A stretch of DNA of 64,000 bases from Octopus bimaculoides (Eukaryota), in the NCBI RefSeq assembly GCF_001194135.2, contig NC_068982.1:75983214-76047213 (forward strand). Reading direction: 5' to 3'. Numbering within the stretch: position 1 is the stretch's first letter; every line of letters starts with the position of its first letter. The position numbers and the translations under genes are program-made. The notes under the pieces were generated by a model. That model saw only the letters and a list, made by a program, of their open reading frames with translations. It ran no database searches and was not told where the DNA came from. Shown one piece after another: positions 516 through 54,069 of this stretch.

Positions 516-1508
516 GTATATCTCTTTTTTTTTAAATTCCAAACCATTTTACACATATGAATATTTTTATTTGCATTACTTTTTGAGCAGAACTGACTGA
601 ACTGAACCCAGTAATGTTCATTACTGAAGAGAATAATGTTTCTTATCTATTGATTAATCCATTAATCAGAACTAGCTGGATCCATGAATATTTTGTGTTT
701 CTCTTATTTTAGTGTTGTGTAGCCATAGTTCACCTCTGGTTGAGCAAACCTATAATAAGCAGCTAGTCAGATGAATGAAGTAGCATAAATCATGGATCCC
801 TCTACTCAGTTATTCCATTGCTCTGTCTATATGAGAATTATGCTGCATATTCTATCATAGTGTTACAAATCATATGGGATGCTGAGCATGTGAACATGGT
901 ATAATCACTATGCCAAGCTTGGACAACTTATTTGAGAAGTAGGCTGCATGAGACATGACTCATTATCTAGCAGGCTGCACTACTAGAGTTAAATTAAAGG
1001 TAATTTTTTTTATTTAGGTCTGCTATTCAGAAGGGTCCTGTGGGCTGCATGTTGCCCATATCTCTACTATACTATCCAGTCTATTGTTGTTTACCCTCAG
1101 GTTGCGATCATTCATCTGTTCAGGCTGTGATCATCCTATCATTTTGTATATTTAGTCCTCCTTCATTATACAATATGTGTAGCACAATATGGCATGGCTG
1201 AACAGTTAAGAAGTTTGCTTTGCAACCCCAGTGTACTGGGCTCAATCTCAATGTATGGTAGCTTAGGCAAGTATCTGGAATGGCACTTAATTCTCTTTCT
1301 CCTTTGTTGATTTAACTGTAGAAAATAAGTTCCAGATTTTTCTTTGAAAGTTACTTGTGATGTGACTAATATTCCAGAATTATTTTTATGGATTCTCTAG
1401 AATCCATAAAAAAGATTGATCATCATTGCCTCCATCACCACCACAACTATCACAATCATCACTATTATCATCTTGTTAACTGTGTTTTTCTGTTTCTTTC
1501 CCTGCTAG

Positions 1509-1736
1509 GTGGCACTGAAAACCATTTAGTTCTTTTGGATTTACGTCCAGATCAATTGGATGGTGCCTCTGTTGAAAGGATCCTTGAAGAGATAAATATT
1601 GCTGTCAATAAAAATACCTGCCCTGGGGACAAGTCTGCCTTGAAACCCAGCGGTATACGTATTGGAACCCCTGCCCTAACATCACGAATGTTTAAAGAAA
1701 ACGATTTCAAACAAGTTGTTGAATTTATCCATCAAG
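1509..1736 (+). CDS. SHMT: Serine hydroxymethyltransferase, penultimate coding exon (228 bp, phase 1/1)
   Basis: Acceptor ccctgctag ending 1508 and donor G|gtcagt at 1737. Translates [76 protein letters not shown](G), with the hallmark SHMT motifs NKNTCPGD and [12 protein letters not shown]. Phase is compatible with both neighbouring exons. Confidence 0.98.
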
Positions 1737-2139
1737 GTCAGTTTTTCAGTCATTTATTATTATTATTTTTTTGTTTTGTTTTGTTAGTACAGGCATGGCT
1801 GTGTGGTTTGGAGATTTGTTTTCCAACCACATGGATTAGAGTTTTGCCTTACTGCATAGTAAACTACAGTCCGTGTGTGCATATATATGTGTGTGTTTAT
1901 GTATATATCTCTCTCTCTATGTATATATATGTTTGTATGTATGTCATCATTTTTATGTCCTTTTTTCTATGCTTGCATGAATCAGGTGGAATTTGAGGCA
2001 GATTTTCTACAACTAGATACTCATTCTCTCACCAACCCTAATCCTGATACTTTCTTATTGTTCTTATCTTTATTATTGATGTTGATGCTGTTGTTGTCAG
2101 TACTATTGTGGTAAGGACCTTCTCCACCACCATCTGTTG

Positions 2140-4036: not shown

Positions 4037-4960
4037 GTGCGGGTGACACATGAAATTTTTCAAGCGAGATCGTTGCCAGTGCCCCTGGACTGGCTCTTGT
4101 GCGGGGCCGTCGTAGGATTTTCGAGCGAGATGGTTGCCAGTGCCCCTGGGCTGGCTCTTGTGCGGGTGACACATGAAATTTTTCGAGCGAGATCGTTGCC
4201 AGTACCCCTGATCTGGCTTTTGTGCGGGACCGTTGTAGGATTTTCGAGTGAGATCGTTGCCAGTGCTCCTGGATTGGCTCATGTGCGGGTGACACATGAA
4301 ATGCACCATTTTGGGCGTGGCCATTGCCAGTGCCGCCTGGCTGACCTTCGTGGGATTTTCGATCGAGATTGTTGCCAGTGCCCCTGGACTGGCTCTTGTG
4401 CGGGTGACACATGAAATTTTTCAAGCGAGATCGTTGCCAGTGCCCCTGGACTGGCTCTTGTNNNNNNNNNNNNNNNNNNNNNNNNNNNNNNNNNNNNNNN
4501 NNNNNNNNNNNNNNNNNNNNNNNNNNNNNNNNNNNNNNNNNNNNNNNNNNNNNNNNNNNNNNNNNNNNNNNNNNNNNNNNNNNNNNNNNNNNNNNNNNNN
4601 NNNNNNNNNNNNNNNNNNNNNNNNNNNNNNNNNNNNNNNNNNNNNNNNNNNNNNNNNNNNNNNNNNNNNNNNNNNNNNNNNNNNNNNNNNNNNNNNNNNN
4701 NNNNNNNNNNNNNNNNNNNNNNNNNNNNNNNNNNNNNNNNNNNNNNNNNNNNNNNNNNNNNNNNNNNNNNNNNNNNNNNGCACCATTTTGAGCGTGACCG
4801 TTGCCAGTGCCGCCTGGCTGGCCTTTGTGGGATTTTCGAGCAAGATCGTTGCCAGTGCCCCTGGCCTGGCTCTTGTGCGGGTGGCACATAAAATGCACCA
4901 TTTTGAGCGTGGCCGTTGCCAGTACCGCCTGACTGGCCTTCGTGCGGGTGACACGTAAAA
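4037..4960 (+). repeat. ~61-66 bp GC-rich minisatellite array, interrupted by two N gaps
   Basis: Units such as gtgcgggtgacacatgaaatttttcaagcgagatcgttgccagtgcccctggactggctctt, alternating with variant units. Confidence 0.95.
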
Positions 4961-11416: not shown

Positions 11417-12220
11417 TCTTTTGTCTGCATCAGTGATGATAATCATCCCTCATCCGCTTCAATTTTATCACCATCATCATCACCACCATCCCCATCATAA
11501 CCATCACTATCATCGTCACCATCACAATCTTCTGCTTCTTCCTCCTTTTTTATTTTTCTCCATATCATTGTCAGTGTCATTTTTCATACCCTCACAGATG
11601 TGCTGGCACCATCATCATCACCATCACTATTGCTGTAATGTTCTTTGGTGGCTTCAGTGTCATCATCGTTGTGTGTCATTAACATCACCTCCTACCCAAC
11701 ACTCCTCCTGCCACTGCTCCTCCCCCACACCGCTTTCCATCATCATTTGTTGTCATTACAACTGTTTTAGGTGGGTAGGAAGAGCTGTATCAGTGTAATA
11801 ACCATTCCATTCACATTAATGTCAGGGTCTCTCTCACCTCCTCATCTTCCCCTATCCTTGTGGTCATCATCCTCACCACCACCACCACCACCATTGTCAT
11901 TGCTCTTCCTTTCTCTCTTTATCACTGTATCAAAACTACTGCCAACAATGTGTATATATGTGTGTGTTTGATGTGTTTAAGTGTATGTGTTTAATGGTGT
12001 GTGTTGATGGCCAGGACTGGATACAGAATAAATGTCTTTTGTGATTTATTAGATAAGAAACGGTCAGTTTTGCTATCAATTAAGGATGGAAGGTAGGAGA
12101 ATGTAATTATTAAGGAGGCAGCGTAGGGTCATTCACTCTTACCCCACCTGTGACATGGAGGGGAGGGACAAGTGAGTGGGGTGGAAGAAACTTCATCTTT
12201 TCACCTCACATCTTTTTATT

Positions 12221-18052: not shown

Positions 18053-20600
18053 TCCTTATTTATCATCATCGTTTAACATCCGCTTTCCTTGCTGGCATGG
18101 GTTGGACGATTTGACTGAGGACTGCCAAGCCAGTAGGCTGCAGCAAGCTCCAATCTGATCTGGTAAGGTTTCTACAGCTGTATGACCTTCCTAACACCAA
18201 CCACTCTGAGAATATAGTGGGTGCTGCTTACGTGCCACTGGCATGGGAGCCAGTCAGGGGGAATCGGCATCGACCACGTTCGGATGGTGCTAATTACGTG
18301 CCATTGGTAGGTTGCCAGTCAGTAGGAACTGGCATCGACCACGTTCAGATGGTGCATTTTGTTATGTGCCACTGGCACAGGAGCCAGTCAGGGGGCACTG
18401 GCATCGACCACTTTTGCATGGTGCTTTTTACGTGCCACCAGCACAGGGAGCCAGTCAAGAGGCACAAGCATCGACCCACACTCGAATGGTGCTTATTACA
18501 TACCACCAGCACGGGTGCCAGTCAGGTGGCACTGGCCACAACTACGATTTTGATTTCACATGACTCAACAGGTCTTCTCAAGCACATGATATTTCCCGGC
18601 GATTCAAGGGTACTTTCAAATGGGCTGGTTATGCAACACTGGCATCGGCTACGGCTGTGATCTCATTTTACTTGCCGGGTCTTCTCAATCACAACATACC
18701 TCCAAAAGTCTTGGTCTCTTCACCACCTCATCCCATGTCTTCCTGAGTTTACTTCTTCCACAGGTTCCTTCCACTGTAAGGGTGTGATACTTCTTCACAC
18801 AGCTCTCCTCATCCATACGCAACACATGGCCTTACCAGCGTAGTCGTCTCTCTTGTACACTACATCTGATGCTTCTTATGTCCAATTTTTCTCTCAGGGC
18901 ACTTAAACTCTGTCGTGTATGCACACTGACATTACACATCCAGCGGATCATACTAACTTCATTTCTTTCATGTCCTCAACTGTCATGGCCCATGTTTTAC
19001 TGCCGTGTAGCATGGCAGTTCGCACACATGCGTCATACAGTCTACCTTTCACTGAGCGAGAGGCCCTTTCTTGCCAGCAGAGGTAGGAGCTTTCTGAACT
19101 TTGCCCAGGCTATTCTTATTCTAGCAGCTATGCTCTCAGAGCACCCCACCACTACAGACTTGGTCACCTAGGTAGCAGAAGCTATATCAACTACTATCTA
19201 AAGCATCACCATTACCATTGTAGCAGTTGACTATGGTGTTGCTACACCAGTCATTGAGAAATAACTACAAGGGTATCAAATTGTTGGATCAGGTGATGAA
19301 TGTCACAGAGAGTTAGCCTAGATAAGATACAGTTTGATTTTGTCCTTGGCAAAAGCACCACTGATGCTATATTTCTGGTAAGGCAACTGCAGGAGATATA
19401 CCTAGTCAAAGATAAACCTCTGTATTTGGCTTTTATTGACTGGGAGAAGCTTTTGACAGGTTCCCTCGATCCCTCATCTAGTGGTAAGTGGGGAAAATAA
19501 GGATAGACGAGTGGTTGGTAAGAGCTGTACAAGCCCTGTGCAGGAATGCTGTCAATAAAGTGAGGGTTGGCAACGAGTATAGTGAAGAATTCAGGGTTGA
19601 AGTAGGGGTTCATTAAGGATGTTCCTAAATCTCTTGACCATGCGGAGGGTTCTTAAGCTTCCAAATCCTTCTTTTCCAGATTGGTCTGCTTCTTGGCATC
19701 CTTCTGGTCTCGAGTTTAAAGTCACTAATAACTAGCCTATGCTGGGAGGTACATTCTTCAACAGGCAGGGTCTTTGTATTTAAGAGCAATCATGCATCCT
19801 GCTGTATGGTGAGAATGAAATCAATCTGGCTAGCAGAGTCACCTGATTGATAGGTTATGAGGTGGCCGGCTGGCTTCCTGAAGTTTGTAGATCAAAAGGT
19901 TATTTGCATCACAGAACTCAAGGAGCCTAGTTCCCTCTTCGTTTCGGGAACCAATTCCATGTATACCATGGAAGATACCAGGTTGCCCTCCGACATGCCC
20001 ATTAAAATCTGCAGCCACAAAGATGAGATCATTGTCACTCGTCTTTGATGTAGCCAGCAGAAGAATATCATAAAAGTGGTCCTGTTCATTTGGTAGTCCT
20101 GCTTGTGGGGTGTAGGTAGAAATAATTGTAGCTATACCATTCTGTAAGACTAGCTTGAGTTTAAACACTGTGTCGCACACTCTGACTACCTTTATGACCT
20201 TATCTACCCATTTCTCTGCAAGAAGTATGCCCACACCCCCTACTCCGTCACTACCTCCCCAGAAGATTTTATACCTATGTGCATTGCCTGTAAGGACCCT
20301 GGCTGAAACTCTTCACCTTACCTCTTGTATGCAGCATACATCAACACGCCTCCGTTCAAGCATCTCTACAATCTCGCTAGACCTACATTTCAATGTGCCT
20401 ACATTTACAGTGCCAACTCTGAAAACTGGGGAAGGGATGTGGGAGGAAACAAAGGAAGGAGAGATGTTATTCAGCACCTGAAAAGGTTTCCGTGTCGTTT
20501 GATAGACGTGTCACATCGGTTCTTCTCGCTTTTAACCTATCGTCATTCAAACATGTTAAAATTGTTGCCTCTACTGCGGGATGAGAGTAAGGAAGCATTG
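18053..20600 (-). mobile_element. RTE-clade LINE, rearranged: endonuclease, inverted RT block, C-terminus, repeat-containing 3' UTR and (GAT)n tail
   Basis: Minus strand carries the APE domain FRVGTVNVGTLK...DVCCIQEVR...VGILLAEKW...DFNGHVG...RNEEGTRLLEFC, and the C-terminus FCYLGDQV...AWAKFRKLLPLL...WMCNVS...RWxGHVLRM. The plus-strand block 19255-19620 carries RT motifs NNYKGIKLL, QFDFVLGKSTTDAIF, AFIDWEK and VGVH. Confidence 0.92.
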
Positions 20601-24790: not shown

Positions 24791-25820
24791 CATCACCTAC
24801 GTGAATCGAACCGAGGACGAATAAAGGAACAGAGGCTGCTGAAATAAGTGATAGAGCACGAGGAAGACCATATGTATAATTGCAAGAACCCAATTGTAGT
24901 GGCAGCGTCCAAATGGCGGGGTAGCGTTTGAGGATTGTAAACAAGATAGGAAAAGTCTTCAGACAACTTCGGTTTAGCATAGAGATGCCAGCATGGTGTG
25001 TGGTGAGGAAGGTACTATACTCCTTATTAGAAGAGAGGCTTTAGCGTAGAGGTGTAAAAAGATCAGGGGTTAACTTTAGATAGAGTTAGCTATAAAAATG
25101 CAAAAATAGTATTGAAAGTGTAAGTTCACTTGGAATGAATAAAATATTAAGTTATTACTAGAATCGAATAAGATGAAATATAACGGATTAAGATAAAATA
25201 AAATATAATAAAAGTAAAGTAAGTGAACAGATTAAATAAAGTAAGTAGATTAAAATGATTTAATTAGTATTTATAAGCTAGGTGAAGAGTGAAAATATAA
25301 GTAGTAAAGTGTTGTATAACGAGTTAAGACAGAAGGTAAATATACTAATTTAATTAAATAAGCTTATGCCATATCTCAACCATGCTTAAGTGAAAGTGTA
25401 AGAGAATTATACAGAGATACTTGACTTACTGTGACAAAATCGAAAGGTTTTAAAGAATTTATGAACACAAGAGGAGAGCACTTCATGTTGTTTGTCTAAT
25501 AATTATGTTGGATTATGTAATAGTATTTGTATAGATTCTTTCAAGCATAGCCAACACGGAGTATTTTAACCCTAGCATGGAGGCCCCAAATCAATAATGG
25601 ATCAAATCAATAATGAATCAAATCAATAATGGATCAATAGGTATGACCTATTGTTTCTCAAGGTTGTGCATGTGGTCGGCTAGAGAAGTAGATTTACTAT
25701 ATTTCTTAAATATTCAAATGTACTGAGTATCTTTGATTTGAATTAACGGTTGCACCAGTATAAATCTTGGTATATATATATATAAATGGAGTTAAACGCA
25801 GGTGTTATTCAAATTCTTTT

Positions 25821-26085
25821 ACTTCCGACACATGTTTCGAAGATATCACTGGTATTATTCCAAAGGAATAAAATAGTGTAAAACTGTTGCGTCGACGGCC
25901 CCAGACGATGAAGTAGGCTAGTCCAATACCTAGATATAGAGGGAGTAGTCTAGACAACGTGGTAGTTGAGTAGAGGTCATCCGAACGTGCGAAATAACAG
26001 TGGCGACGAGGATTTCGTAGCTCACACAACCAATGTGTAGTAGTGCGATATAACAAAAACAATGTAATCTTCTCTTCAGGGAAAT
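25821..26085 (-). ncRNA. Type I hammerhead ribozyme, intact core, ~222-nt insertion in loop II
   Basis: Minus strand: ATTTCC(26085-26080)-CTGAAGA(26079-26073)-GAAGAT(26072-26067)...ATCTTC(25844-25839)-GAAA(25838-25835)-CATGTG-TC(25828-25827)-GGAAGT(25826-25821). Stem I is 6 bp (one G.U), stem II 6 bp perfect, with a GUC triplet. Confidence 0.8.
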
Positions 26086-26429
26086 GAAGAAATGAAACTT
26101 GTCAATAAGACATTTTAACAGAATATTATGGATATGTATAGTGATCNNNNNNNNNNNNNNNNNNNNNNNNNNNNNNNNNNNACGTGGTAGTTGAGTAGAG
26201 GTCATCCGAACGTGCGAAATAACAGTGGCGACGAGGATTTCGTAGCTCACACAACCAATGTGTAGTAGTGCGATATAACAGTGGCGACGAAGATTTCGTA
26301 GTTCACACAGCCATTGTGTAGTATTGCGATATAACAAAAACAATGTAATCTTCTCTTCAGGGAAATGAAGAAATGAAACTTGTCAATAAGACATTTTAAC
26401 AGAATATTATGGATATGTATAGTGATCAA

Positions 26430-29220
26430 CTGAGCTTTATTAAGTTTGTTTAAAAAAGAAGCGTTAGAGGATATAACGTCAAAGGTAGCCTATAGAAAAA
26501 GGAGGGGTAAAGGAAAGAAAAAATCCAAATAAATGAGAAGTATGAAACGATATGTAAATTAAATAAAACCCTATAGTCTTGGAAAAAGATATATCTAGTG
26601 AATGTGAAATGTAAGAAGAATATTAATGTGTAAATTATATATAATGATGGATATCACTTATATGAACTAAAAGTGTGTTTCTGCCAATGTTTATATCGGT
26701 ATGCACGCTCTATAACCGTATTTACAAGGGGATTTTTAGAAAAAAGAATAAAAAATAGTTCAGAATTACAGAGAAGACAGAATTCCTTGCCTTTATCATA
26801 AGGTATCGAAATTGAGAGAATCAACCAATCTAAATTAAATTGTTTATTGTGGTCTTTTAGATACCAAATTAATTTACTAAGCCCTGTACTGTTACGTTTA
26901 TTCCTATCCCTAAATGTAGAATAATGATTAGAAATTCTTTTAGATAACCGAGAAGATGAACTGCTTATATAAAAAAATATTTTATTACCAGAAGTAATTT
27001 TACACTAGTATATAGAATTTTTAATTTTAGAGTTACTTGACATAAATTTGATTCTGTTGTAATTGACTTCAGATGCAATAACCTTGTTATTCATATTTCT
27101 AGGGGGATGGAAGGTATTAGCTAAATTAATGTTCGTATTAGTAAATGTATCCCTATTTAACAGGCTAATATTATGTGAGGAGATAATTTGTAAGAGATTT
27201 TTTGTGTTGGAAAAACCAATCCTAACTGTGTGTGAGTTGATAATAGAGTAATGCCTAGAATGCTTTGGAAAATTCCTAATAATAGCTTCACGAAACTTAC
27301 AAAGTTTAGTTAGTTTGGTCTAATACATAAGTGGTAATAGGTTGGTTCAATCATATTGAAAACAAGGACAAATATTAATTCTTGCAAGTTGATATTAATG
27401 ATTATTATTCCTCCATTAACCCAATTGCTCTTAATAAAGCAATTTTATTTGCCAAGAAAAACTCCACTAAAACAAATACTGACAATTACTATAACCATAA
27501 TTCTGATAAGAATAATACCATAAGGCAAATTATCCCTTTTGGAAAAAAAATAAAAACTAACTCAATTAAATCTTTGCGTGGATTAATAACTAAAAACTTT
27601 ACTAATAATAAATATTGTGAAATAATTAATAATAGGAAAATTAGAATAGAGTTCTCTTTATCGCATAATCTATTTCGAATTATATCCTCAATTAACTAGA
27701 TTATTTTTATGAGAATCGTAAAATAGACACTCTTTCATTGAATACACAACATGATAAATCAGCCATGACAAATGGTGATGATTTTAGTTCAAATAGTGAA
27801 TGAGAAACAGCTCACTAGAACTTCTTTGTTATAATCAATAGTAAAGCTGATGAAAATAAATTTTGTAATTGTAAGAATAAGCCCAACTGTAAATTTAGTA
27901 ATTTCTGTAAATGCAATAATCTGGTATATCAGACTATTGTTGAATCTGAAAGTAATAATTATTTTTATATTGGAGCAACTGGATGCTTTATAAAGAAAAG
28001 AATAGCTAACCGCGAAAGTAGTTTTAGGAACCGCCTAAAAATTAGCAATACAAGTCTTAGCAAGTTCATTTGGAGAATAAAGAACAGCAATAAGAGTTAT
28101 AATAAGAGTTATAAAATTAAATGGAAAATTATGACTCACGCTAAACCATATAGTATCAATGATAGGCGATGTGAACTTTGTGTAGAAGAAATTTAGCAAA
28201 TATCATCTTCCAGACATCAACTACTTAATTCTAGAAATGAAAAAGTTTATCCTGTGTACACGTTTCGAAGTATATTTTCTCTTAATATTGCTAGACTATA
28301 TATGAAATACATACAAAGTAATAAAGTACAAACATGTAATATGTAATTTTTGTATAAATGAAATTGTAATAATTAACATGATCAATTTAGCAATATAATT
28401 GCTATGTAAAGAGACAATCTTCGTTAGGAATAATCTTACTTTCAATAATACATAATCTGATGATGTAATACACTAAATCTATGTTGCTATGTAACACGCA
28501 ATTTTTCCCTTTCTGCATCATGAATTTATTAACAATAATATAACTCTTATTTTTAATAATCTTGATTTTTTTATTTTTGTTTAATACAAATTTTTTTTTT
28601 ATACGTATGCACACACATATATAACATATATATATAAACAAACACATATTCATACGCTACGCGTTAACGAGTATATATACAGATATATAAATAATACATA
28701 GTTTTAACGGCTATCCTCTTCAAATTAAACTACATATATACATAAAGAAATCAATCTGATTCGATAAGATTTTATAATAATAAATACATAGGCAGTAATA
28801 TACATTGATTAAGTAAACTAATAGAAATTTACATAGATAACGGTTTTAGATTTTTTATCTTACTTTATATTATATATTTATTATTATTTGTTCTTTTTAC
28901 TTTTTACCCTTATACTATATTTTTAAATTTTTTAATATCATTTTTTTTTTAGATTAGTAACATAGACATACAAACACTAAAAGTATACATTTCTTAATTT
29001 TCTTAGTCTATTGATAAAACCCAATCCATCAACATGTAACTCTTTCTATTGTACTCTAGCCCTGATGAGATTCTACCCAATATTACTCAAAATGGAATTT
29101 TATTCTAATCTTTGGATTTATTCCAATCTTTGAATTTGCAATTATATATTGGACTAAATTTAAACGAAAGTAGGCTTTATTTGGCAGTATGTTAATAAAT
29201 TAATTTTGTATCCTTACCAA
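26430..29220. mobile_element. Patchwork of Penelope-like element fragments in both orientations
   Basis: Plus strand: RT motif-A-like QVDINDYYSSINPIALNKAILFAKK (~27385), linker NNRKIRIEFSLSHNLFRIISSIN, and GIY-YIG CNCKNKPNC..CKCNNLVYQ..YIGATG..LSKFIWRIK..KWKI..AKPY..CELC (27861-28200). Minus strand: HTVRIGFSNTKNLLQIISSHN (~27130-27200). A weaker GIY-YIG tail KPYSLGKR lies near 26560. Confidence 0.8.
29058..29176 (+). ncRNA. Hammerhead-like motif with long branched stem II in a PLE 3' region
   Basis: AGCC-CTGATGA(29062-29068)-[97 nt containing nested pairs CCAATAT/ATATTGG, TCAAA/TTTGA, TGGAAT/ATTCCA]-GAAA(29166-29169)-G-TA-GGCT. Stem III is one nucleotide short. Confidence 0.55.
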
Positions 29221-30479: not shown

Positions 30480-32140
30480 TCTCAACTGTTTTTTAAGTAT
30501 AAAATGTTTCTCTGAGGAAGGAGCTGCTTTCTAACAAAAATACAAAGCCCCATCGTTGAAATGTAGATAACAGAAAACAATGCTATATTCTAAACCTGAA
30601 AAAAGTCTTGCACATTTTTACTGTTCCACTTACAGATTGTATTTGTAATGTGCGAGTTAGTTGTTTGATTTCTTTTTCTGAAAACCCTTGCTTATCCAGA
30701 TTGTCACTTATGTATTTACCCACAAAACCAACTATTATTGGTAGAAATGTGAATTTATAATCTAGATATAGACGGCTGGAGCTTTCGAAGCAGTTGTCCG
30801 TAATTATCCTCTCTTTCTTAGATTTGACAGCTGATCTCCATGACGGTACACACTTTTTCTTGCCTGTCCCAAACAATGTCTGGCGTGTTGTTTACAATGA
30901 CAGATGTTTTGATTGGGATGTTCCACCAATATTCTTTGTGCTGGTGTTTGTGTATGAATTCAATAACAAGTGGATTTTCTATATTTATTCCAGAACAGTC
31001 TTTTTTCCGAATGGCATTGCATATTATTTTCGCGACAACATCATGTAGCAAAGGGAAGTAGTACCTTGATGACATTTTTGGACAGTTGTTAAGTACATGT
31101 ATGACGTCTTCTACAGAAATATGACGTAATCAACATTTTCACTTGCATCTTGGAGCCCCAAGGGCTTCACTGTCTCTTTTGCTCATTAGGTATTTAGTGG
31201 CAATCTCCTGTTCTTGGATTGCAAATGCATAACCGCAAATGCATACCCGAAGTGTGATGTAGCGGTCACGAGTCCACGACAGGCTTCGCTTCATGTCGAT
31301 ATTACTGTCTTCATCAAATCTTCAGGAAGCATACTCATGCATAGTCCCTTTTTTTTTGTATACTGAGTGTTTTACATCCAGGTCTTCTTTGAAGCATGTT
31401 AGTTCGGCTATTTTGGAGAGTGTATGTTGGGCAATCAGTAAGAAAGTGTTTCCTGAGGAGCTCGCTACTGACACGTAGAATATTGTTCTTTTCACTTTTC
31501 AGCACTGAGTTAATGTATCTATTTTTGCTGCTGTTTAACAAGTGCTGTCAAAAGGAGACTAAAATGTTTCTCTGTGCTGTTGAAGCCGACTAGATTATTG
31601 TCATTGTTGCGTTTTGCCAAGTTCACATCTGAATGATAAGGCCTACGCACAAGGGCGTCCAACCGTGACAATGTCTTCATTTTGTATAGCTTGGATTATA
31701 TTTTCCAATGTGCTTGTTTGTTAAGATGAGAGGGTTTTGAAGACGCTTGGTTATCATTTCTAGCGGATCGAGCGACCGTGTAGAGGCTCAAAGCAGGGTT
31801 TTATCTGAGGGAGATTTGGGTGTTATTTCTTATCGGCTGAGCTACCACATCCTCTACGTAGTTGCTTGGTCTGTTAGAGAGAATACAACCAAATCTTCCT
31901 AAAAAAAAAAAACACCCTGATGTCTCTATTAGATTTTGTCTTTTTTTATGATTTTTATTCATGGAGATAGCGCATGTCCATACCTTATCACACCATCGTA
32001 GCAGGCATTGGGGGTTTCTCTTCAAGCTATACTGTATTAACTTAAATGTATCTCAAATTTCAGATATCTCTCTCGCATTCTTTCCCTTGTATATCACTCA
32101 CCTATTTACTATTACTTGTAACAACACAGTCTTATACAGA
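30480..32140 (-). mobile_element. 5'-truncated, decayed R4/Dong-like non-LTR retrotransposon (restriction-like endonuclease)
   Basis: FAIQEQEIATKYL; degenerate CCHC knuckle KC*LRHISVEDVIHVLNNC; HDVVAKII; YWWNIPIKT..NNTPDIVWDRQEKVCTVMEISC (PD..E motif); FLPIIVG; LQIQSVSGTVKMCKTFF*. The 3' end abuts (CATA)n at 30441-30479. Confidence 0.85.
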
Positions 32141-49540: not shown

Positions 49541-49572
<32 letters not shown>

Positions 49573-49574
<2 letters not shown>

Positions 49575-52500
49575 GTAGAAATATAAAAATATATAAAAGG
49601 AACAAAAATACTGGAGATTCAGTATACACCACGTGGCAAAATTATGAGTTGAAAATATGTGGACAACATATATAAAAAGTGGAAGAGAAATGCCTTCGTT
49701 TCACATAGTTTAATATCTTTTTATAAAGAATTAAAAAAAATATATACATAAAATATATACACGGCGGTGCATCAGCATGGCCGCAGCTCTAAACTGAAAC
49801 TATAAACAACAAATAAACAACAAATAAACAACAAATATCTTATGGATGTAGTGATATCCGACGGTTTTCGCTATTTAAATTAGCTTTTCAAGGCACATTG
49901 TGAAGTAATTAATTCTTGTGACAAAGGGATCTCGCCATTTTGGATGCTTGAAAAATAAGAATGAGTTTAGAAAGTGGACCAAGGGAGGTAACAGGTGGTA
50001 AGGGGGACAACTAACTCCTCAGTATAATTTTTGAAGTGGTCAAGTTTGTGTATTAAGGTGTGGTCTGTACTTTTGTACGAACAGGCTTTCCTTGTTTAGG
50101 CGTTCTTGTAAGGAGATTGAATCTTTGCATTGGTATAATGGAAAGATAGGGAAATTCGGGGTTTTATTTCTTGCGCATCTGTCGATATGTTCGCTCAGGG
50201 CTATCTGCCTGTATTGGGGAAAACGAATCTATTCTTTATGCAGAGTAACTATGCGTCTCAATGTAAGGCTCGTTTGGCCCACATAAAAAGCAGGTTAGGT
50301 ATGGGCAAGTACCACAATTAGGTCGTCTGCATTTTTTAACTGTTGGTATCGTATGTATTGAGTATAGTTTTGCATTTGTTAGGAGTCTCTTGAGTGATTT
50401 GTCTTGTCTTTTGCATTTGAAGAGTTTATGTGTATTTAGGATGTTGTTCATTTTCGGGTCTTGAGTGAGCAGAGGGAGATTTTGTATAATTGTGTTGTAT
50501 GCTTCATTATTTCTGGGGTTGATATGTATGGGAGTGATTTAAAGTGAGGTGTGGTGTTTTGTTTTGTTGTCCTTAGTGTGTTTGTGTCCAATTTCTTGGC
50601 ACGTTGAATTCCATGGTCTATAAATGCGAGTGGGTATTGACGTTCAATGAGGTCTTGTAGGCGAAGTTCCCGAGTGGTTATGTCAGATACAATTGTACAG
50701 ATCCCTTTAGCTAGATTGAATGGGATATTTATTTTGGTGTGTTTAGGATGGCATGAAATGAAAAGGAGATACTGTTTTGAGACTGTTGGTTTGTAGTAGA
50801 TGTCAGTTGCAATTTAGTTGTTGGATTTTTTAATAATCAAAATGTCCAGAAATAGGAGCTGTTCCATTGTAAATTGAATATTGGAGTTTATATTGTTCAG
50901 CGTGGATTTGAAATCCAGGAGTTTATCAAAGGTTTCATTTCAGATGATAAAACAATCGTCTAGGTACCTTTTCCAGTTTTCTCTTATATACTGGTGGAAT
51001 GGGGGTCCAAATTTTTGGAGCAAAAGTTCATATAGGGTACATTCAAAGAAACCCATTATTAGGTTCGCAAGGACAGGCGCTGCTTTTGTTCCCATCGCAA
51101 TACCACATTTTTGGCGGTAATATGTTGCATCGAATAGGAAGTAATTGTTTTGTAGGATGAACAATGACAAAGGTCTGGTTTATGCGGTCTGGGAGAACTT
51201 CAGGTATTTTTCTGAGCAGAATTTTATTGCCTCTGGGCCCGCTATAATAGGCCTTAATTTTAAGTCTTCTGGTGTTGGGATATTTATGTATAGACCCAGA
51301 TCTGATTTGCAGGCATTAGTAATTATTTGACTCTTGTGGATTTTGGGGAGACCATAGAAAAAGCTTGGTTTGCATTTAAAGTTTGTGATAAAGTCTTTTT
51401 CTTTTTCTGTTAGGCCTTTTCCGTGTTTGAGTATTAAAGATGCAAGATCTTTTAATGTTTTTTGCTGCCTATAATTTGCAACTTTTTCATGAAAGGAGTA
51501 ATTTTCTAGTATAGACAATGCTAGGTTTTTATAGCATTCTGTGTCCATCAGGATTATAACACTACCTTTGTCTGCTTCTTTGATTATCAGGTCTTTGTCG
51601 TTTTTTAGCTGTAGTAGGTGCTTCCATTGTAGGTTGTTGAAGTTAGGTACAATTTTTGGTCTATAGATAGTGTGGGGAAAATTCTGGATATGGTTGCAGA
51701 AGTCGTCTAGTGTTTTATTCCTTCCTTTGGGTGGTAGATAATTGCTTTTGTTTTTCACTAGTGATTCGCCATCGTTGTTGCAGTTGGTTAGTACTTCTGT
51801 CAATCGAAGTTTTCCACAGAATTCTGAAATTTTATCTTTAATTTCATTGGAGTTGAGTCTACGTAGGGTGGGTGTAAATTTTAAACCTTTAGCTAAAATA
51901 TGGATTTTTGTTGTGGAGAGAGTTTTCTTAGATAAGTTGATTGTTTTGGGTTTCTCCCGTAACTTCTGTTCCAACGTGTGTCCCTGTGTCTCTTTACTCT
52001 GTTGTAATTAGGTTGGAAGGGGTTCTCAGTGTTAGGGTTGTTATTGTGGGAGTATTGTTGTGTAGGTGAATTGGTTGGGATTATGTAGTGTGGGTGTTTA
52101 TGTTGGAATGAATTGTAAGGGTGTTTGGTCCTGTATTGGGCGCTTTTTGTCTGGGTGAGAGAGTTGCAATTCCGAGAGTTGAATTCCTATGTTGAGGAGT
52201 AGGTAGGATCCCCTGTCTGTTTCTAGTTGTTGGAGGGAAAGAATTGAAATAATAATTGTTATTATTCTTCTTCCTAGTCCTGGGGTGTTTCTTACTGGTG
52301 TTTGCTATTAGTGGTATTTCCTATTAATGGGGATTCCTATTGTAAGGCTGGTGGTGGTTGATTTTCCAGTGACGGGATAGTTTTGTGTGTCTGTGTTGGA
52401 GTTTGATCTGGGTGTACGATTATTGGTTTCTGTGGATGTATTTGTTTTGGATTTTTTTAAAAAGGGGTTGTTTGAGGTGTAATCGTTTTTGAAATGAGAT

Positions 52501-53356
52501 TCGTAGTTGAGAAAAAAATTGATATTGTTTTCCCACCAATGTAGTGAATAAATTTCGTCCGATTCACAGTCGTCTTTCCATCGTTTAATAACATTTTGTA
52601 GAAGTTGTTCATTGGCATGTATCGTGAGTTCTGTGATCATCTCGTCATCGATCGTTTTATATTTTTGTTCATGATTCTTAGCTCTGAGTTTAAGTAATTC
52701 AATCTCTCTTCTCAGTTTTCTAGTGTTAGTTTTCTCTGAGAGTTCATTGTTGTTCTGGTTCATCTGGGATGGGTTTGATTTGGAGTTTGCGTGGCAAGAT
52801 TAACAGTGTTGAAGTGATCCATTTTTCATATATTTGTGCCTTATTGTTATTTTTTATCACGTTCCAGAATGAGAGTTTTCTGGTGTTGAGATTTTTGGAC
52901 CAAGTGTGACTAATGCGGTTTTTAATTAAGTATGCCGAAATTGGTGTGTTTTCATTCGGGGTGGGTGATTTTTGTAGTGTATCTTTTATAGTATTGTTTG
53001 TGAAAATGTTGGTAACGGATTGGTTTAATGTAGTGCATAGTTCACTTAGATTTTGACTGACCTTCTCTGTAGATTGCTTTCTTTGAAAGTTTTCTAAGTC
53101 TTCTCGGGTTTGGTGGTATAATCCATCGATTTTGTTGGTTAGAGTGACTAAATTTGTGTTGATTTCTTTCAATTCCTTAAGGATGTCCTCGTTGGTAATT
53201 TTATCCGACGCGGTAGAATTTGTTTCGCAGGCATTTTGTGTACCACGTGAGGCAAATAGTAGAAATATAAAAATATATAAAAGGAGCAAAAATATTGGAG
53301 ATTCAGTATACACCACGTGGCAAAATTATGAGTTGAAAATTTGTGGAAAACATATA
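49573..53356 (-). mobile_element. Penelope-like retroelement (Neptune-like), ~3.8 kb, disrupted ORF, 100-bp direct terminal repeats
   Basis: Broken ORF from ~53316 to ~50040: ILAKGLKFTPT, IKEADKG, FYGLPKIHK, LRPIIAGP, YRQKCGIAMGTKAAPVLANL, WKRYLDDCF, PFLDI, CRRPNCGTC (Neptune-type Cys linker), YVGQT, KESLFVQKYRPHLN. Repeats 49573-49672 and 53257-53356 differ at 4 of 100 positions. Confidence 0.93.
49854..49898 (-). ncRNA. Minimal hammerhead-like motif (U3-A8 core) in the PLE 3' UTR
   Basis: Minus strand: ATGTGCC-TTGAAAA-GCTA-atttaaa-TAGC-GAAA-ACCG-TC-GGATAT, ~150 nt downstream of the GIY-YIG stop on the element's sense strand. Confidence 0.65.
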
Positions 53357-54069
53357 AAACATATATATAACCAATGTGTTGAAAAAAGAATGAAGAATAT
53401 AAGGAATAGATATAGAGAAATGACGGTTTGGAACCGAGTCAATGCATGTTATGGGAATAGAGAATACCACCAATTTTGTAGCCCTAGCATTGTTGTTGTT
53501 GTTGTTGTCATTTCCATTATTCTTATGGTTCGTTTCATTCGTATAATAGTTTCAAATATCAATGCGTGGCAAGTTGAATATCGTAAAGTAAGAATATGAA
53601 AAGGAGATATTTAGATAGATAACTAGATGGATGGATGGATGAATGAATAGATAGATAGATAAACCGATCCATAGATACATAGATGGATATATAGATAGAG
53701 TGATAAAGAGCGAGAAGGAGGGAGGGAAACAGAGGTAGAAGGGGAGAGAACGAGAGAAAGAGAGAGAGAGAGANNNNNNNNNNTGGAGCACCGCCTTTAG
53801 TCGAACAAATCAAGCCCAGGACTTATTCTTTGTAAGCCTAGTACTTATTCTATCGGTCTCTTTTGCCGAACCGTTATTGTTACGGGGACGTAAACACACC
53901 AACATCGGTTGTCAAGTGATAGTGGGGAGACAAACACAGACATAAACCCACACATATATATACATGCATGCATACACCTGTGTGTACGTTTATATATATA
54001 TATATATGTACACACATACACACACACACACATATATGTACATACACACAAACATATATCAATATATAC

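What the first reader, a model, noticed from the sequence alone, without database searches (positions are those of the whole stretch)
25821..26085. Intact-looking hammerhead ribozyme split by a ~222-nt insertion in loop II
Every canonical element is present on the minus strand: stem I ATTTCC/GGAAGT, CUGAAGA, perfect stem II GAAGAT/ATCTTC, GAAA, 2-bp stem III with a 4-nt loop (also the palindrome ACATGT, compatible with dimer cleavage) and a GUC triplet. Predicted cleavage is between 25827 and 25826. The two halves are 222 nt apart, so standard short-loop searches would likely miss it. PLE-associated hammerheads are known but are typically minimal. Discontinuous hammerheads are known (mammalian Clec2) in a different topology. 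A type I PLE-adjacent hammerhead carrying a large cargo in loop II is not something I recognise. It lies next to PLE debris (26430-29220), and other motifs here also have long loop II, which suggests a lineage of expanded hammerheads.
Basis: partly seen in the sequence, partly recalled or inferred. Interest (0 to 1): 0.85.

Follow-up and report, generated by a model that had tools for sequence, protein, structure and literature searches.

The report
Retrotransposon hammerhead relic split by insertion
This is a genuine hammerhead ribozyme motif from the tail of a dead Penelope-like retrotransposon, into whose long second helix another 171-base mobile-DNA fragment later jumped; it is an ordinary nested-transposon fossil, not a new kind of ribozyme.

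Summary
On the minus strand, 26085-25821 reads ATTTCC-CUGAAGA-GAAGAU-[222 nt]-AUCUUC-GAAA-CAUGUG-UC-GGAAGU, with C17 at 25827.

The motif alone is weak evidence: shuffles give about 0.003 matches per 64-kb window. Homology settles the question. The motif lies about 290 nt downstream of a decayed GIY-YIG endonuclease of a Hydra-clade Penelope-like element (PLE). It sits about 40 nt before the (TA)n where the element ends.

Six paralogous copies from other octopus assemblies, including Octopus sinensis, carry the same hammerhead at the same place. Their two halves are only 26-59 nt apart. Helices I and II, including an extended helix II, show compensatory changes.

Relative to those copies the window has a clean 171-nt insertion (26055-25885). 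It begins TGTT and ends AACA, is 47% GC against 32% in the flanks, and is flanked by a 5-bp duplication, GTTTT. Excising it restores CATTGTTTTACA, exactly as in paralogue L015. This points to a nested, solo-LTR-like transposon insertion in the apical loop of helix II. It is specific to this copy.

The second 5' half (26366...) is an assembly redundancy across a 35-N gap. No other hammerhead with a long loop II occurs in the window. Whether the relic can still cleave is untested. Interest is low.

The parts
26080..26085 (-). Hammerhead stem I, 5' strand (AUUUCC)
   Evidence: Sequence. Pairs with 25826-25821. Helix I shows compensatory changes among paralogues.
26073..26079 (-). Core box C3-A9 (CUGAAGA)
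   Evidence: Aligned with CUGAUGA / CUGAAGA / CUGACGA of the paralogues.
26052..26072 (-). Helix II, 5' strand: GAAGAU (10.1-10.6) plus extension UACAUUGUUUUUGUU
   Evidence: Inverted repeat I1, 21 nt, 71% complementary to 25839-25859. 11 modelled pairs are 80% paired across six copies, five of them with double changes.
26056..26060 (-). Left copy of the 5-bp target-site duplication GTTTT
   Evidence: The site is single-copy in the paralogues (CATTGTTTTACAT in L015).
25885..26055 (-). 171-nt inserted DNA (TGTT...AACA), 47% GC. Carries 1.2 copies of a 56-nt unit. Candidate solo LTR or other small transposon.
   Evidence: Absent from all six paralogues. Boundaries and composition. 56-nt unit. 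No other copy in the window or the loci.
25880..25884 (-). Right copy of the target-site duplication GTTTT
25857..25869 (-). Apical hairpin of the family's helix II domain (AUUCC-UUU-GGAAU)
   Evidence: Well kept in L018 and L004, partly in L011; about 65% of cells paired overall and no compensatory change.
25839..25859 (-). Helix II, 3' strand (extension plus AUCUUC, 11.6-11.1)
25835..25838 (-). Core G12 A13 A14 A15.1 (GAAA)
   Evidence: GAAA in five of the six aligned copies; GAGA in L011.
25827..25834 (-). Helix III (2 bp, loop AUGU, palindrome ACAUGU), U16.1 and C17. Predicted scissile bond lies between 25827 and 25826.
   Evidence: GAAACAUGUGUC is identical in L018 and L004.
25821..25826 (-). 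Stem I, 3' strand (GGAAGU)
26182..26427 (-). Redundant copy of the 5' half plus the start of the insert, with one extra 56-nt unit (26336-26281). It abuts the 35-N gap at 26147-26181.
   Evidence: 190/190 identical to 26146-25957 after the extra unit is removed.
26657..27319 (-). Decayed C-terminal linker and GIY-YIG endonuclease of a 5'-truncated Hydra-clade PLE. The hammerhead begins about 290 nt downstream.
   Evidence: tblastn hits to P0073 / P0103 residues 378-597. 1656 homologues, of which the long ones have a DKT-type RT and a CxCx5C linker. Clade features in PMC8557442.
27316..28241 (+). Inverted, internally deleted copy of the same kind of PLE (RT N-terminus 27316-27483, endonuclease 27858-28241)
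   Evidence: tblastn. Inverted 5'-truncated copies are typical of PLEs (PMC8557442).
25771..25784 (.). (TA)7 microsatellite at the 3' end of the element, the likely insertion target
   Evidence: Homology with L018 ends at about 25770. Hydra-clade PLEs insert into (TA)n.

Best explanation
The feature is the 3'-terminal type I hammerhead of a dead, 5'-truncated Hydra-clade Penelope-like retrotransposon in an octopus genome.

This PLE family's hammerhead has:
- a 5-6 bp helix I;
- a long helix II domain (6 bp, a small internal loop, 5 or more bp, and in some copies an apical hairpin; 54-59 nt in the better-kept copies);
- a 2-bp helix III with a palindromic loop, the weak-helix-III design that published work links to cleavage as a dimer in tandem transcripts.

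After this copy had inserted at a (TA)n site, a second mobile element integrated into the apical loop of helix II. It left 171 nt that begin TGTT and end AACA, flanked by a 5-bp target-site duplication, GTTTT. It is most likely a solo LTR or a comparable small transposon, and it contains a 56-nt variable tandem unit.

Because it landed at the tip of a long helix, all core nucleotides and both strands of helices I and II survive. That is why the ribozyme looks intact although it is split by 222 nt.

Shown: the motif, its homology and position in the PLE, covariation of the helices, the clean filled-site versus empty-site relation, and the duplication.

Inferred: that the insert is a transposon, and specifically LTR-like; that the relic has no present function; and that active family members self-cleave.
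For: Motif and coordinates.

PLE context:
- Endonuclease remnant at 27319-26657 (-) with an inverted partner copy.
- 1656 homologues, the long ones with DKT and CxCx5C, matching the Hydra-clade description, including (TA)n targets and universal hammerheads.

Paralogues:
- They carry an endonuclease remnant of about 70% nucleotide identity.
- They carry the same hammerhead about 290-575 nt downstream, with 26-59 nt between the core boxes.
- Alignment A3 with the proposed structure gives 75% paired cells against 24-43% when partners are slid. Ten pairs change on both sides, against 1-6 in the slid controls. Only 2 of 500 shuffles reach the observed pairing.
- Covariance model R1 scores the paralogues at 89-98 bits, but scores the window only as separate pieces of 42, 27 and 21 bits.

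Insertion:
- 171 nt, with GTTTT on both sides.
- 47% GC against 32% in the flanks.
- Excision restores CATTGTTTTACA, identical to L015.

Folding: helices I and II are kept in the MFE structure with or without the insert. The ensemble probability of the hammerhead fold is 0.0036 with it and 0.0081 without it.
Against: - No second copy of the 171-nt insert was found in the window or in about 60 kb of related loci. Its identity as a repeat, LTR or otherwise, is therefore unproven.
- A 5-bp T-rich direct repeat and 4-nt TGTT/AACA termini are short features.
- No octopus genome could be searched at the DNA level. I cannot exclude that the closest subfamily members (over 90% identical) all carry the insert.
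- All core positions and 14 stem pairs are intact in a copy whose ORF is badly decayed. That could hint at constraint, although the target is small and 3 of the 7 copies examined (six aligned plus L004) keep a full core.
- No activity or expression data exist.
Confidence: 0.75

Rival explanations
1. The split hammerhead is a functional, possibly selected, 'expanded' ribozyme. The 222-nt segment is a cargo or regulatory domain held in helix II. The RNA self-cleaves at 25827/25826, and the arrangement represents a lineage of long-loop hammerheads.
For: All 11 core nucleotides are intact, with perfect 6-bp helices I and II across the insert. The insert is predicted to fold as an independent domain closed by the extended helix II, with little cost to the hammerhead fold. 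The family already has an unusually long helix II domain of 54-59 nt.
Against: The insert is absent from all six paralogues. It has a target-site duplication and foreign composition. The host element is a truncated, stop-riddled fossil. No partner hammerhead lies on the same strand for dimer cleavage. With natural flanks the CUGAAGA box is sequestered in an alternative hairpin, and the fold is no better than shuffles (z = -1.28).
Confidence: 0.06
2. The inserted DNA is not a transposon. It is filler or templated DNA captured during double-strand-break repair, or a locally expanded minisatellite. The GTTTT repeat is then repair microhomology rather than a target-site duplication.
For: No other copy of the insert in the 64-kb window or the loci. 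It contains a 56-nt tandem unit that varies in number between the two assembly copies. The terminal features are short.
Against: Only about 69 of the 171 nt belong to the 56-nt unit. A clean insertion with an exact 5-bp duplication and TG...CA ends is the classical signature of integrase-type insertion. GC content differs by 15 points from the flanks.
Confidence: 0.15
3. The split is an assembly artefact. The two halves were joined wrongly, or the insert was placed there by scaffolding around the N gap.
For: A 35-N gap and a redundant 190-nt overlap lie immediately upstream. PLE loci are known to mis-assemble (PMC8557442).
Against: The segment from the 5' half through the insert to the 3' half (26146-25821) is continuous sequence without N. 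The left junction is seen twice, in both overlapping contig ends. The junctions give an exact duplication and restore the paralogous empty site.
Confidence: 0.03
4. The motif is a chance match to a loose hammerhead descriptor and has no ribozyme ancestry.
For: Shuffles give 0.19 matches per window at relaxed stem lengths and 0.003 at the observed ones. Genome-wide, many chance matches are expected. Rfam gives no hit.
Against: Both halves and their flanks are homologous to uninterrupted hammerheads at the same position in six paralogous PLE copies, with covarying helices.
Confidence: 0.01

Closest known systems
Hammerheads of Penelope-like elements (Cervera & de la Pena 2014, PMC4209133), specifically the canonical hammerheads reported as universal in the Hydra clade (Craig et al. 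2021, PMC8557442)
   Same: Type I topology. Located near the 3' end or pLTR of a GIY-YIG PLE. G10.1-C11.1 pair, helix II larger than usual, very short palindromic helix III that implies dimer-dependent cleavage. Host element inserted at (TA)n and accompanied by an inverted truncated copy.
   Different: The helix II domain of this octopus family is much longer (54-59 nt, with an internal loop and in some copies an apical hairpin) than the 6-8 bp helices described. In the window copy it also holds a 171-nt secondary insertion. No Rfam hammerhead model scores any family member at E of 1 or below.
Discontinuous hammerhead of mammalian Clec2 3' UTRs (Martick et al. 2008; recalled from memory and from citations in PMC3088659)
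   Same: Core and stems are intact but separated by hundreds of nucleotides, so short-loop searches miss them.
   Different: As I recall it (not checked here), the long segment in Clec2 separates the substrate and enzyme strands in a different helix and topology, the arrangement is conserved among species, and it is active. Here the segment lies in the helix II loop, is specific to one copy and bears transposon insertion marks.
Metazoan non-LTR retrozymes (Cervera & de la Pena 2020, PMC7229834; Li et al. 2026 preprint, 10.64898/2026.07.22.740005)
   Same: Type I hammerhead with a weak helix III, related to PLE pLTR sequences. Non-coding 'cargo' of a few hundred nt is associated with the ribozyme.
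   Different: Retrozyme cargo lies between complete hammerheads in tandem 170-400 bp monomers, which is topologically helix I. Here there is no tandem monomer array and the extra DNA lies inside helix II.
Nested transposon insertions / solo LTRs
   Same: Clean insertion relative to paralogous empty sites, a 5-bp target-site duplication, TG...CA termini (TGTT/AACA), composition unlike the host element, and an internal tandem repeat.
   Different: No other copy and no full-length parent element could be identified with the data available. 171 nt is short for an LTR.

Membership tests
Hammerhead ribozyme, type I (PLE / metazoan kind) | Conserved core: C3 U4 G5 A6 N7 G8 A9, G12 A13 A14, the A15.1-U16.1 pair, and H17 at the cleavage site | tested here: met
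   CUGAAGA ... GAAA ... A-U ... C17, all present. The same boxes are aligned in the paralogues.
Hammerhead ribozyme, type I (PLE / metazoan kind) | Three helices around the core, helix I open-ended, with helices supported by covariation | tested here: met
   Helices of 6 bp (I), 6 bp plus extension (II) and 2 bp (III). Across six copies 75% of cells are paired, against 24-43% in slid controls, and 10 pairs change on both sides. The sample is small and the structure was derived from the window copy.
Hammerhead ribozyme, type I (PLE / metazoan kind) | G10.1-C11.1 closing pair and a short palindromic helix III / loop 3 | tested here: met
   G-C at 26072/25839. ACAUGU palindrome at 25835-25830.
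Hammerhead ribozyme, type I (PLE / metazoan kind) | Compact, contiguous motif (helix II of a few bp with a small loop) recognised by curated models | tested here: not met
   222 nt separate the helix II strands. Rfam gave no hit at gathering score or at E up to 10. The uninterrupted paralogues also give no Rfam hammerhead hit at E up to 1.
Hammerhead ribozyme, type I (PLE / metazoan kind) | Mg2+-dependent self-cleavage 3' of position 17 | not testable with these tools
   Only thermodynamic folding was possible. The hammerhead-compatible fold lies 1.3 kcal/mol above the MFE, and its ensemble probability is 0.004.
Hydra-clade Penelope-like element (host of the motif) | C-terminal GIY-YIG endonuclease with CxxC and CxH motifs around the conserved E and N; CxCx5C linker; DKT instead of DKG in the RT | tested here: inconclusive
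   The window keeps the endonuclease with CLLC..E and a decayed C-x-H. Its linker cysteines and RT are lost. The homologues it matches best carry ADKT and CNCx5C. Assignment therefore rests on homology, not on the window's own motifs.
Hydra-clade Penelope-like element (host of the motif) | Hammerhead near the 3' end, insertion into (TA)n, and inverted or partial-tandem copies | tested here: met
   The hammerhead ends about 40 nt before (TA)7 at 25784-25771. An inverted copy lies at 27316-28241 (+). Features as described in PMC8557442.
Solo LTR / nested transposon (the 171-nt insert) | Target-site duplication of 4-6 bp flanking the insert, with a matching empty site in a homologous sequence | tested here: met
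   GTTTT at 26060-26056 and 25884-25880. The empty site CATTGTTTTACA is found in L015.
Solo LTR / nested transposon (the 171-nt insert) | TG...CA termini with short inverted repeats | tested here: met
   5' TGTT and 3' AACA. Only 4 nt, so weak.
Solo LTR / nested transposon (the 171-nt insert) | Other dispersed copies, or a full-length element bounded by the same sequence | not testable with these tools
   None in the window or the fetched loci. No octopus genome can be searched at the DNA level here. A protein-space proxy search with the ORF through the insert found nothing.
Metazoan non-LTR retrozyme | Tandem monomers of about 170-400 bp, each with a complete type I hammerhead | tested here: not met
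   TRF finds only a 56-nt unit here. The apparent repeat of the 5' half is a 190/190-identical assembly overlap. Only one 3' half exists.
Discontinuous hammerhead (Clec2 type) | Long separation of the strands that is conserved among homologues | tested here: not met
   Six paralogues lack the long segment.

The most novel reading that the evidence does not exclude
The insert-bearing hammerhead is not just a relic. It would be a natural type I hammerhead that still self-cleaves with a folded domain of more than 200 nt grafted onto helix II. Either a PLE / retrozyme-like subfamily propagates with this expanded helix II, or the locus yields a processed RNA ending at 25826.
Probability: 0.05. Interest if true: 0.65.

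Novelty: new member of a known kind. Interest (0 to 1): 0.22.

Why it matters
As it stands, this is one more PLE-associated hammerhead, in a clade where hammerheads are already reported as universal. An ordinary nested insertion happens to sit where the ribozyme tolerates it best.

It has two modest uses:
- It shows that this octopus Hydra-clade PLE family has a hammerhead with a 54-59 nt helix II domain that curated Rfam models do not detect. Counts of PLE hammerheads in cephalopods from standard searches are therefore probably too low.
- It offers a ready-made natural test of how large an insertion in helix II a dimer-dependent hammerhead can tolerate.

It does not open a new class of ribozyme or answer a long-standing question.

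Tried and rejected
1. Rfam at gathering score on the whole window, and at E up to 10 on 25600-26500, gave no hammerhead. The paralogous loci gave none at E up to 1; the mir-297-like hits in L018 are TA/TG microsatellites.

2. Descriptor scans for further hammerheads in the window, with either short or long loop II, found none.

3. Exact look-ups of three window ORFs spanning the motif, and homology searches with the degraded endonuclease and with the 85-aa ORF through the insert, were all empty. The route that worked was the exhaustive representative search followed by contig look-ups.

4. Loci L006, L020 and L021 end, or are interrupted by microsatellites, before the hammerhead.

5. I considered that the last 45 nt or so of the insert (25923-25880, '...CGACGCAACAG') is a decayed original 5' half, as global MAFFT and the covariance model forced it to align. 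I rejected this. Identity there is only about 50% over 21 nt, and homology to the paralogues resumes exactly at GTTTTACAC. The distal 5' half is by contrast clearly homologous and is perfectly complementary to the 3' half.

6. I considered a tandem retrozyme-like array because of the repeated 5' half. I rejected this after the 190/190 identity test.

7. A 12-mer shared between the insert and the 67-nt array at 18220-18536 is at chance level (E about 1).

8. The supplementary hammerhead file of PMC8557442 is not held.

9. The bacterial, viral and metagenome DNA collections were not scanned, because octopus DNA is not expected in them.

Full report
**1. The observation**

| Element | Sequence | Coordinates |
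|---|---|---|
| Stem I, 5' strand | ATTTCC | 26085-26080 |
| Core box | CUGAAGA | 26079-26073 |
| Helix II, 5' strand | GAAGAU | 26072-26067 |
| Intervening segment | 222 nt | 26066-25845 |
| Helix II, 3' strand | AUCUUC | 25844-25839 |
| Core | GAAA | 25838-25835 |
| Helix III to C17 | CAUGUGUC | 25834-25827 |
| Stem I, 3' strand | GGAAGU | 25826-25821 |

CAUGUGUC supplies C15.2, the AUGU loop, G16.2, U16.1 and C17; A15.1 is the last A of GAAA. ACAUGU is a palindrome. The predicted scissile bond lies between 25827 and 25826.

Rfam finds no hammerhead in the window, at gathering thresholds or at E up to 10 on 25600-26500.

**2. Is the motif more than chance?**

I scanned 300 dinucleotide-preserving shuffles of the window with the same descriptor: loop II up to 500 nt, helix III of at least 2 bp.
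- They gave 0.19 matches per window at stem lengths of 4/4 or more.
- They gave 0.0033 per window at the observed 6/6.

The match is therefore unlikely for one window. A scan of a multi-gigabase genome would still produce on the order of a hundred such matches, so the motif is not proof by itself. No other hammerhead-like motif, with a long or a short loop II, exists in the window.

**3. Context: what the 'PLE debris' is**

*Endonuclease remnant.* The stretch 27004-26657 (-) is an open 116-codon remnant. An exhaustive HMMER search found 1656 homologues at E of 0.001 or below. Most are short, decayed ORFs. The long ones (P0073, P0103, P0066) combine three features:
- an RT with ADKT in place of the PLE 'DKG' motif;
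- a CxCx5C linker (seen in P0103 and P0066);
- a C-terminal GIY-YIG domain with CxxC before the conserved E and CxH after the conserved N.

This is the published description of the Hydra clade of PLEs. That clade is also reported to be short (under 3 kb), to insert into (TA)n, and to carry canonical hammerheads universally (PMC8557442).

*PLE fragments in the window.* tblastn with these proteins shows:
- a 5'-truncated copy on the minus strand (27319-26666, residues about 378-597);
- an inverted, internally deleted copy on the plus strand (27316-27483 and 27858-28241), the arrangement described as typical for PLEs;
- a further endonuclease C-terminal fragment at 25565-25416 (-).

*Position of the hammerhead.* The minus-strand copy ends at (TA)7, 25784-25771. 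The hammerhead thus lies about 290 nt after the endonuclease stop codon and about 40 nt before the end of the element.

**4. Homologues**

Contig look-ups for the closest protein hits returned loci from Logan assemblies of runs SRR11869384-94 and from Octopus sinensis GCA_006345805.1. Their endonuclease remnants are about 70% identical to the window at the DNA level.

Wherever the contig reaches far enough, a hammerhead lies about 290-575 nt downstream:

| Locus | Position | Core boxes | nt between boxes |
|---|---|---|---|
| L018 (O. sinensis) | 11530-11614 | CUGAUGA ... GAAACAUGUGUC | 54 |
| L011 | | CUGAAGA ... GAGACAUAUGUC | 59 |
| L015 | | CUGGCGA ... GAAAUAUAUUUC | 48 |
| L001 | | CUGACGA ... 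GAAACAUAUGUC | 50 |
| L012 | | CUGAUGA ... GAAAUAUAUGUC | 57 |
| L004 | | | 26 |

In the window the same two boxes are 234 nt apart. Local alignment shows homology on both sides of the hammerhead and through both halves, with one large gap in all six paralogues.

**5. Structure and covariation**

I removed the extra segment from the window row and aligned it with five paralogues (A3). I then tested a structure with four parts: helix I (6 bp); helix II (6 bp, a 2x2 internal loop, 5 bp); an apical hairpin (AUUCC-UUY-GGAAU); and helix III (2 bp). Results:
- 75% of cells are paired, against 24-43% when partners are slid by 1-3 columns.
- Ten pairs change on both sides, against 1-6 in the slid controls.
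- Only 2 of 500 column shuffles reach the observed pairing.

The double changes lie in helices I and II, the very helices that span the insert in the window. Two cautions apply: there are only six sequences, and the structure was read from the window copy.

Covariance model R1, built from A3, scores the paralogues at 89-98 bits. It scores the window only in pieces: 42 bits for the 3' part and 21-27 bits for the 5' halves. This confirms that model-based searches miss the split copy.

Rfam does not recognise even the uninterrupted paralogues. The likely reason is the long helix II domain.

**6. The insert**

- Excising 26055-25880 restores '...GAUUACAUUGUUUUACAC...'. The 12-mer CATTGTTTTACA is identical to L015.
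- The junctions carry GTTTT on both sides (26060-26056 and 25884-25880). The inserted DNA proper is therefore 171 nt (26055-25885), beginning TGTT and ending AACA.
- It is 47% GC, against 32% in the flanks.
- It contains 1.2 copies of a 56-nt unit.
- It has no other copy in the window or in the fetched loci, and no Rfam match.

A clean filled-site versus empty-site relation, an exact 5-bp duplication and TG...CA ends are the classical signature of integrase-mediated insertion. I therefore interpret the insert as a nested transposon, most likely a solo LTR. That family assignment is an inference and could not be tested without an octopus genome.

**7. The duplicated 5' half**

The stretch 26427-26182 repeats the 5' half and the first part of the insert, just upstream of a 35-N gap. 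After one extra 56-nt unit (26336-26281) is removed, it is 190/190 identical to 26146-25957.
- This is what two unmerged contig ends or haplotypes differing by one VNTR unit look like.
- The real locus most likely has one 5' half, 288 nt after the endonuclease stop codon, as in L001, L004 and L011.

**8. Folding**

- For the exact 265-nt motif the MFE structure keeps helices I and II. The insert folds as a separate multibranch domain closed by the extended helix II.
- The fully hammerhead-constrained fold lies 1.3 kcal/mol above the MFE.
- Its ensemble probability is 0.0036 with the insert and 0.0081 without it. The insertion is therefore nearly neutral for the predicted fold.
- The 2-bp helix III is not in any MFE structure, as expected for the dimer-dependent metazoan/PLE design (PMC4209133).
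- With natural flanks, an upstream UCUUCA pairs with the UGAAGA of the core box, and the overall fold is no better than shuffles (z = -1.28).
- No second hammerhead on the same strand is available for dimer formation. The only other trace is a decayed remnant on the opposite strand at 28437-28505 (12.5 bits).

**9. Interpretation**

*Best explanation (confidence about 0.75).* This is a fossil 3'-terminal hammerhead of a dead Hydra-clade PLE. A later, copy-specific transposon insertion happened to land in the apical loop of its long helix II. That placement is why core and stems look intact.

*In active relatives.* The ribozyme presumably processes tandem or read-through element transcripts. 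This is inferred from the literature, where activity of PLE hammerheads is low and dimer-dependent.

*Rivals.*
- Functional expanded hammerhead with cargo: 0.06.
- Non-transposon filler or minisatellite insertion: 0.15.
- Assembly artefact: 0.03.
- Chance motif: 0.01.

**10. Comparison and novelty**

- *Membership.* It is a member of the PLE hammerheads: core, helices, G10.1-C11.1, palindromic helix III and position in the element are all met. Compactness and recognition by curated models are not met. Cleavage is untestable here.
- *Versus Clec2.* It works like, but is not, a Clec2-type discontinuous hammerhead, because the long separation is not conserved in homologues.
- *Versus retrozymes.* It is not a retrozyme, because there is no tandem array of monomers.
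- *Rating.* New member of a known kind. The only mildly new aspect is the 54-59 nt helix II domain of this octopus family, which Rfam models miss.
- *Interest.* About 0.2.

Noticed in passing
window 49560-53360 (-): A second, much better preserved PLE of a different, canonical kind. Its reading frames show KGLKF, ADKGS, YGLPKIHK and LRPII motifs, a CRRPNCGTC linker and a GIY-YIG remnant. It has terminal direct repeats of about 100 nt (53355-53255 and 49670-49565) and ends in (TAGA)n. Neither the descriptor nor model R1 found a hammerhead in it.
   Followed up: partly
window 28437-28505 (+): A weak match to the family model (12.5 bits, E 0.11): CUGAUGA, then 10 nt, then UAAAUCUAUGUUGC. It lies about 200 nt downstream of the inverted endonuclease copy. 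It is probably the decayed, internally deleted hammerhead of the plus-strand PLE copy.
   Followed up: partly
window 25416-25565 (-): A third endonuclease C-terminal fragment (C-W-L-C..E...C-V-H-K motif). It lies beyond the (TA)n that ends the hammerhead-bearing copy. No recognisable hammerhead follows it.
   Followed up: partly
window 26147-26181 and 26182-26427: The contig ends on either side of a 35-N gap overlap by 190 identical bases and differ only by one 56-nt tandem unit. This looks like an unmerged haplotype or VNTR redundancy in the assembly. The many other N gaps in the window are typically flanked by microsatellites.
   Followed up: yes
window 4037-4461 and 18220-18536: Two GC-rich tandem arrays (units of 61/123 nt and 67/134 nt). 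They appear to be the same repeat family in opposite orientation: GTTGCCAGTGCCCCTGGACTGGCTC versus the reverse complement GATGCCAGTTCCCCCTGACTGGCTC. Identity unknown.
   Followed up: no
window 1388-1996 (+): An ORF with a stretch (…VLLDLRP…[20 protein letters not shown]…) that I recognise from memory as a serine hydroxymethyltransferase exon. The window may therefore lie in or next to that gene. Not tested.
   Followed up: no
window 19839-20234 (-) and 30583-31075 (-): ORFs that resemble, from memory, an AP-endonuclease fragment of a LINE and the C-terminal part of a non-LTR retrotransposon protein. Not tested.
   Followed up: no
L012 68-183 (-); L018 6935-7948 (-) and 6396-6531 (-): Related loci also show the inverted-copy architecture. 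L012 has a second, inverted and decayed hammerhead (44.6 bits). L018 has an inverted PLE copy with a possible hammerhead remnant (18 bits, E 0.06).
   Followed up: partly
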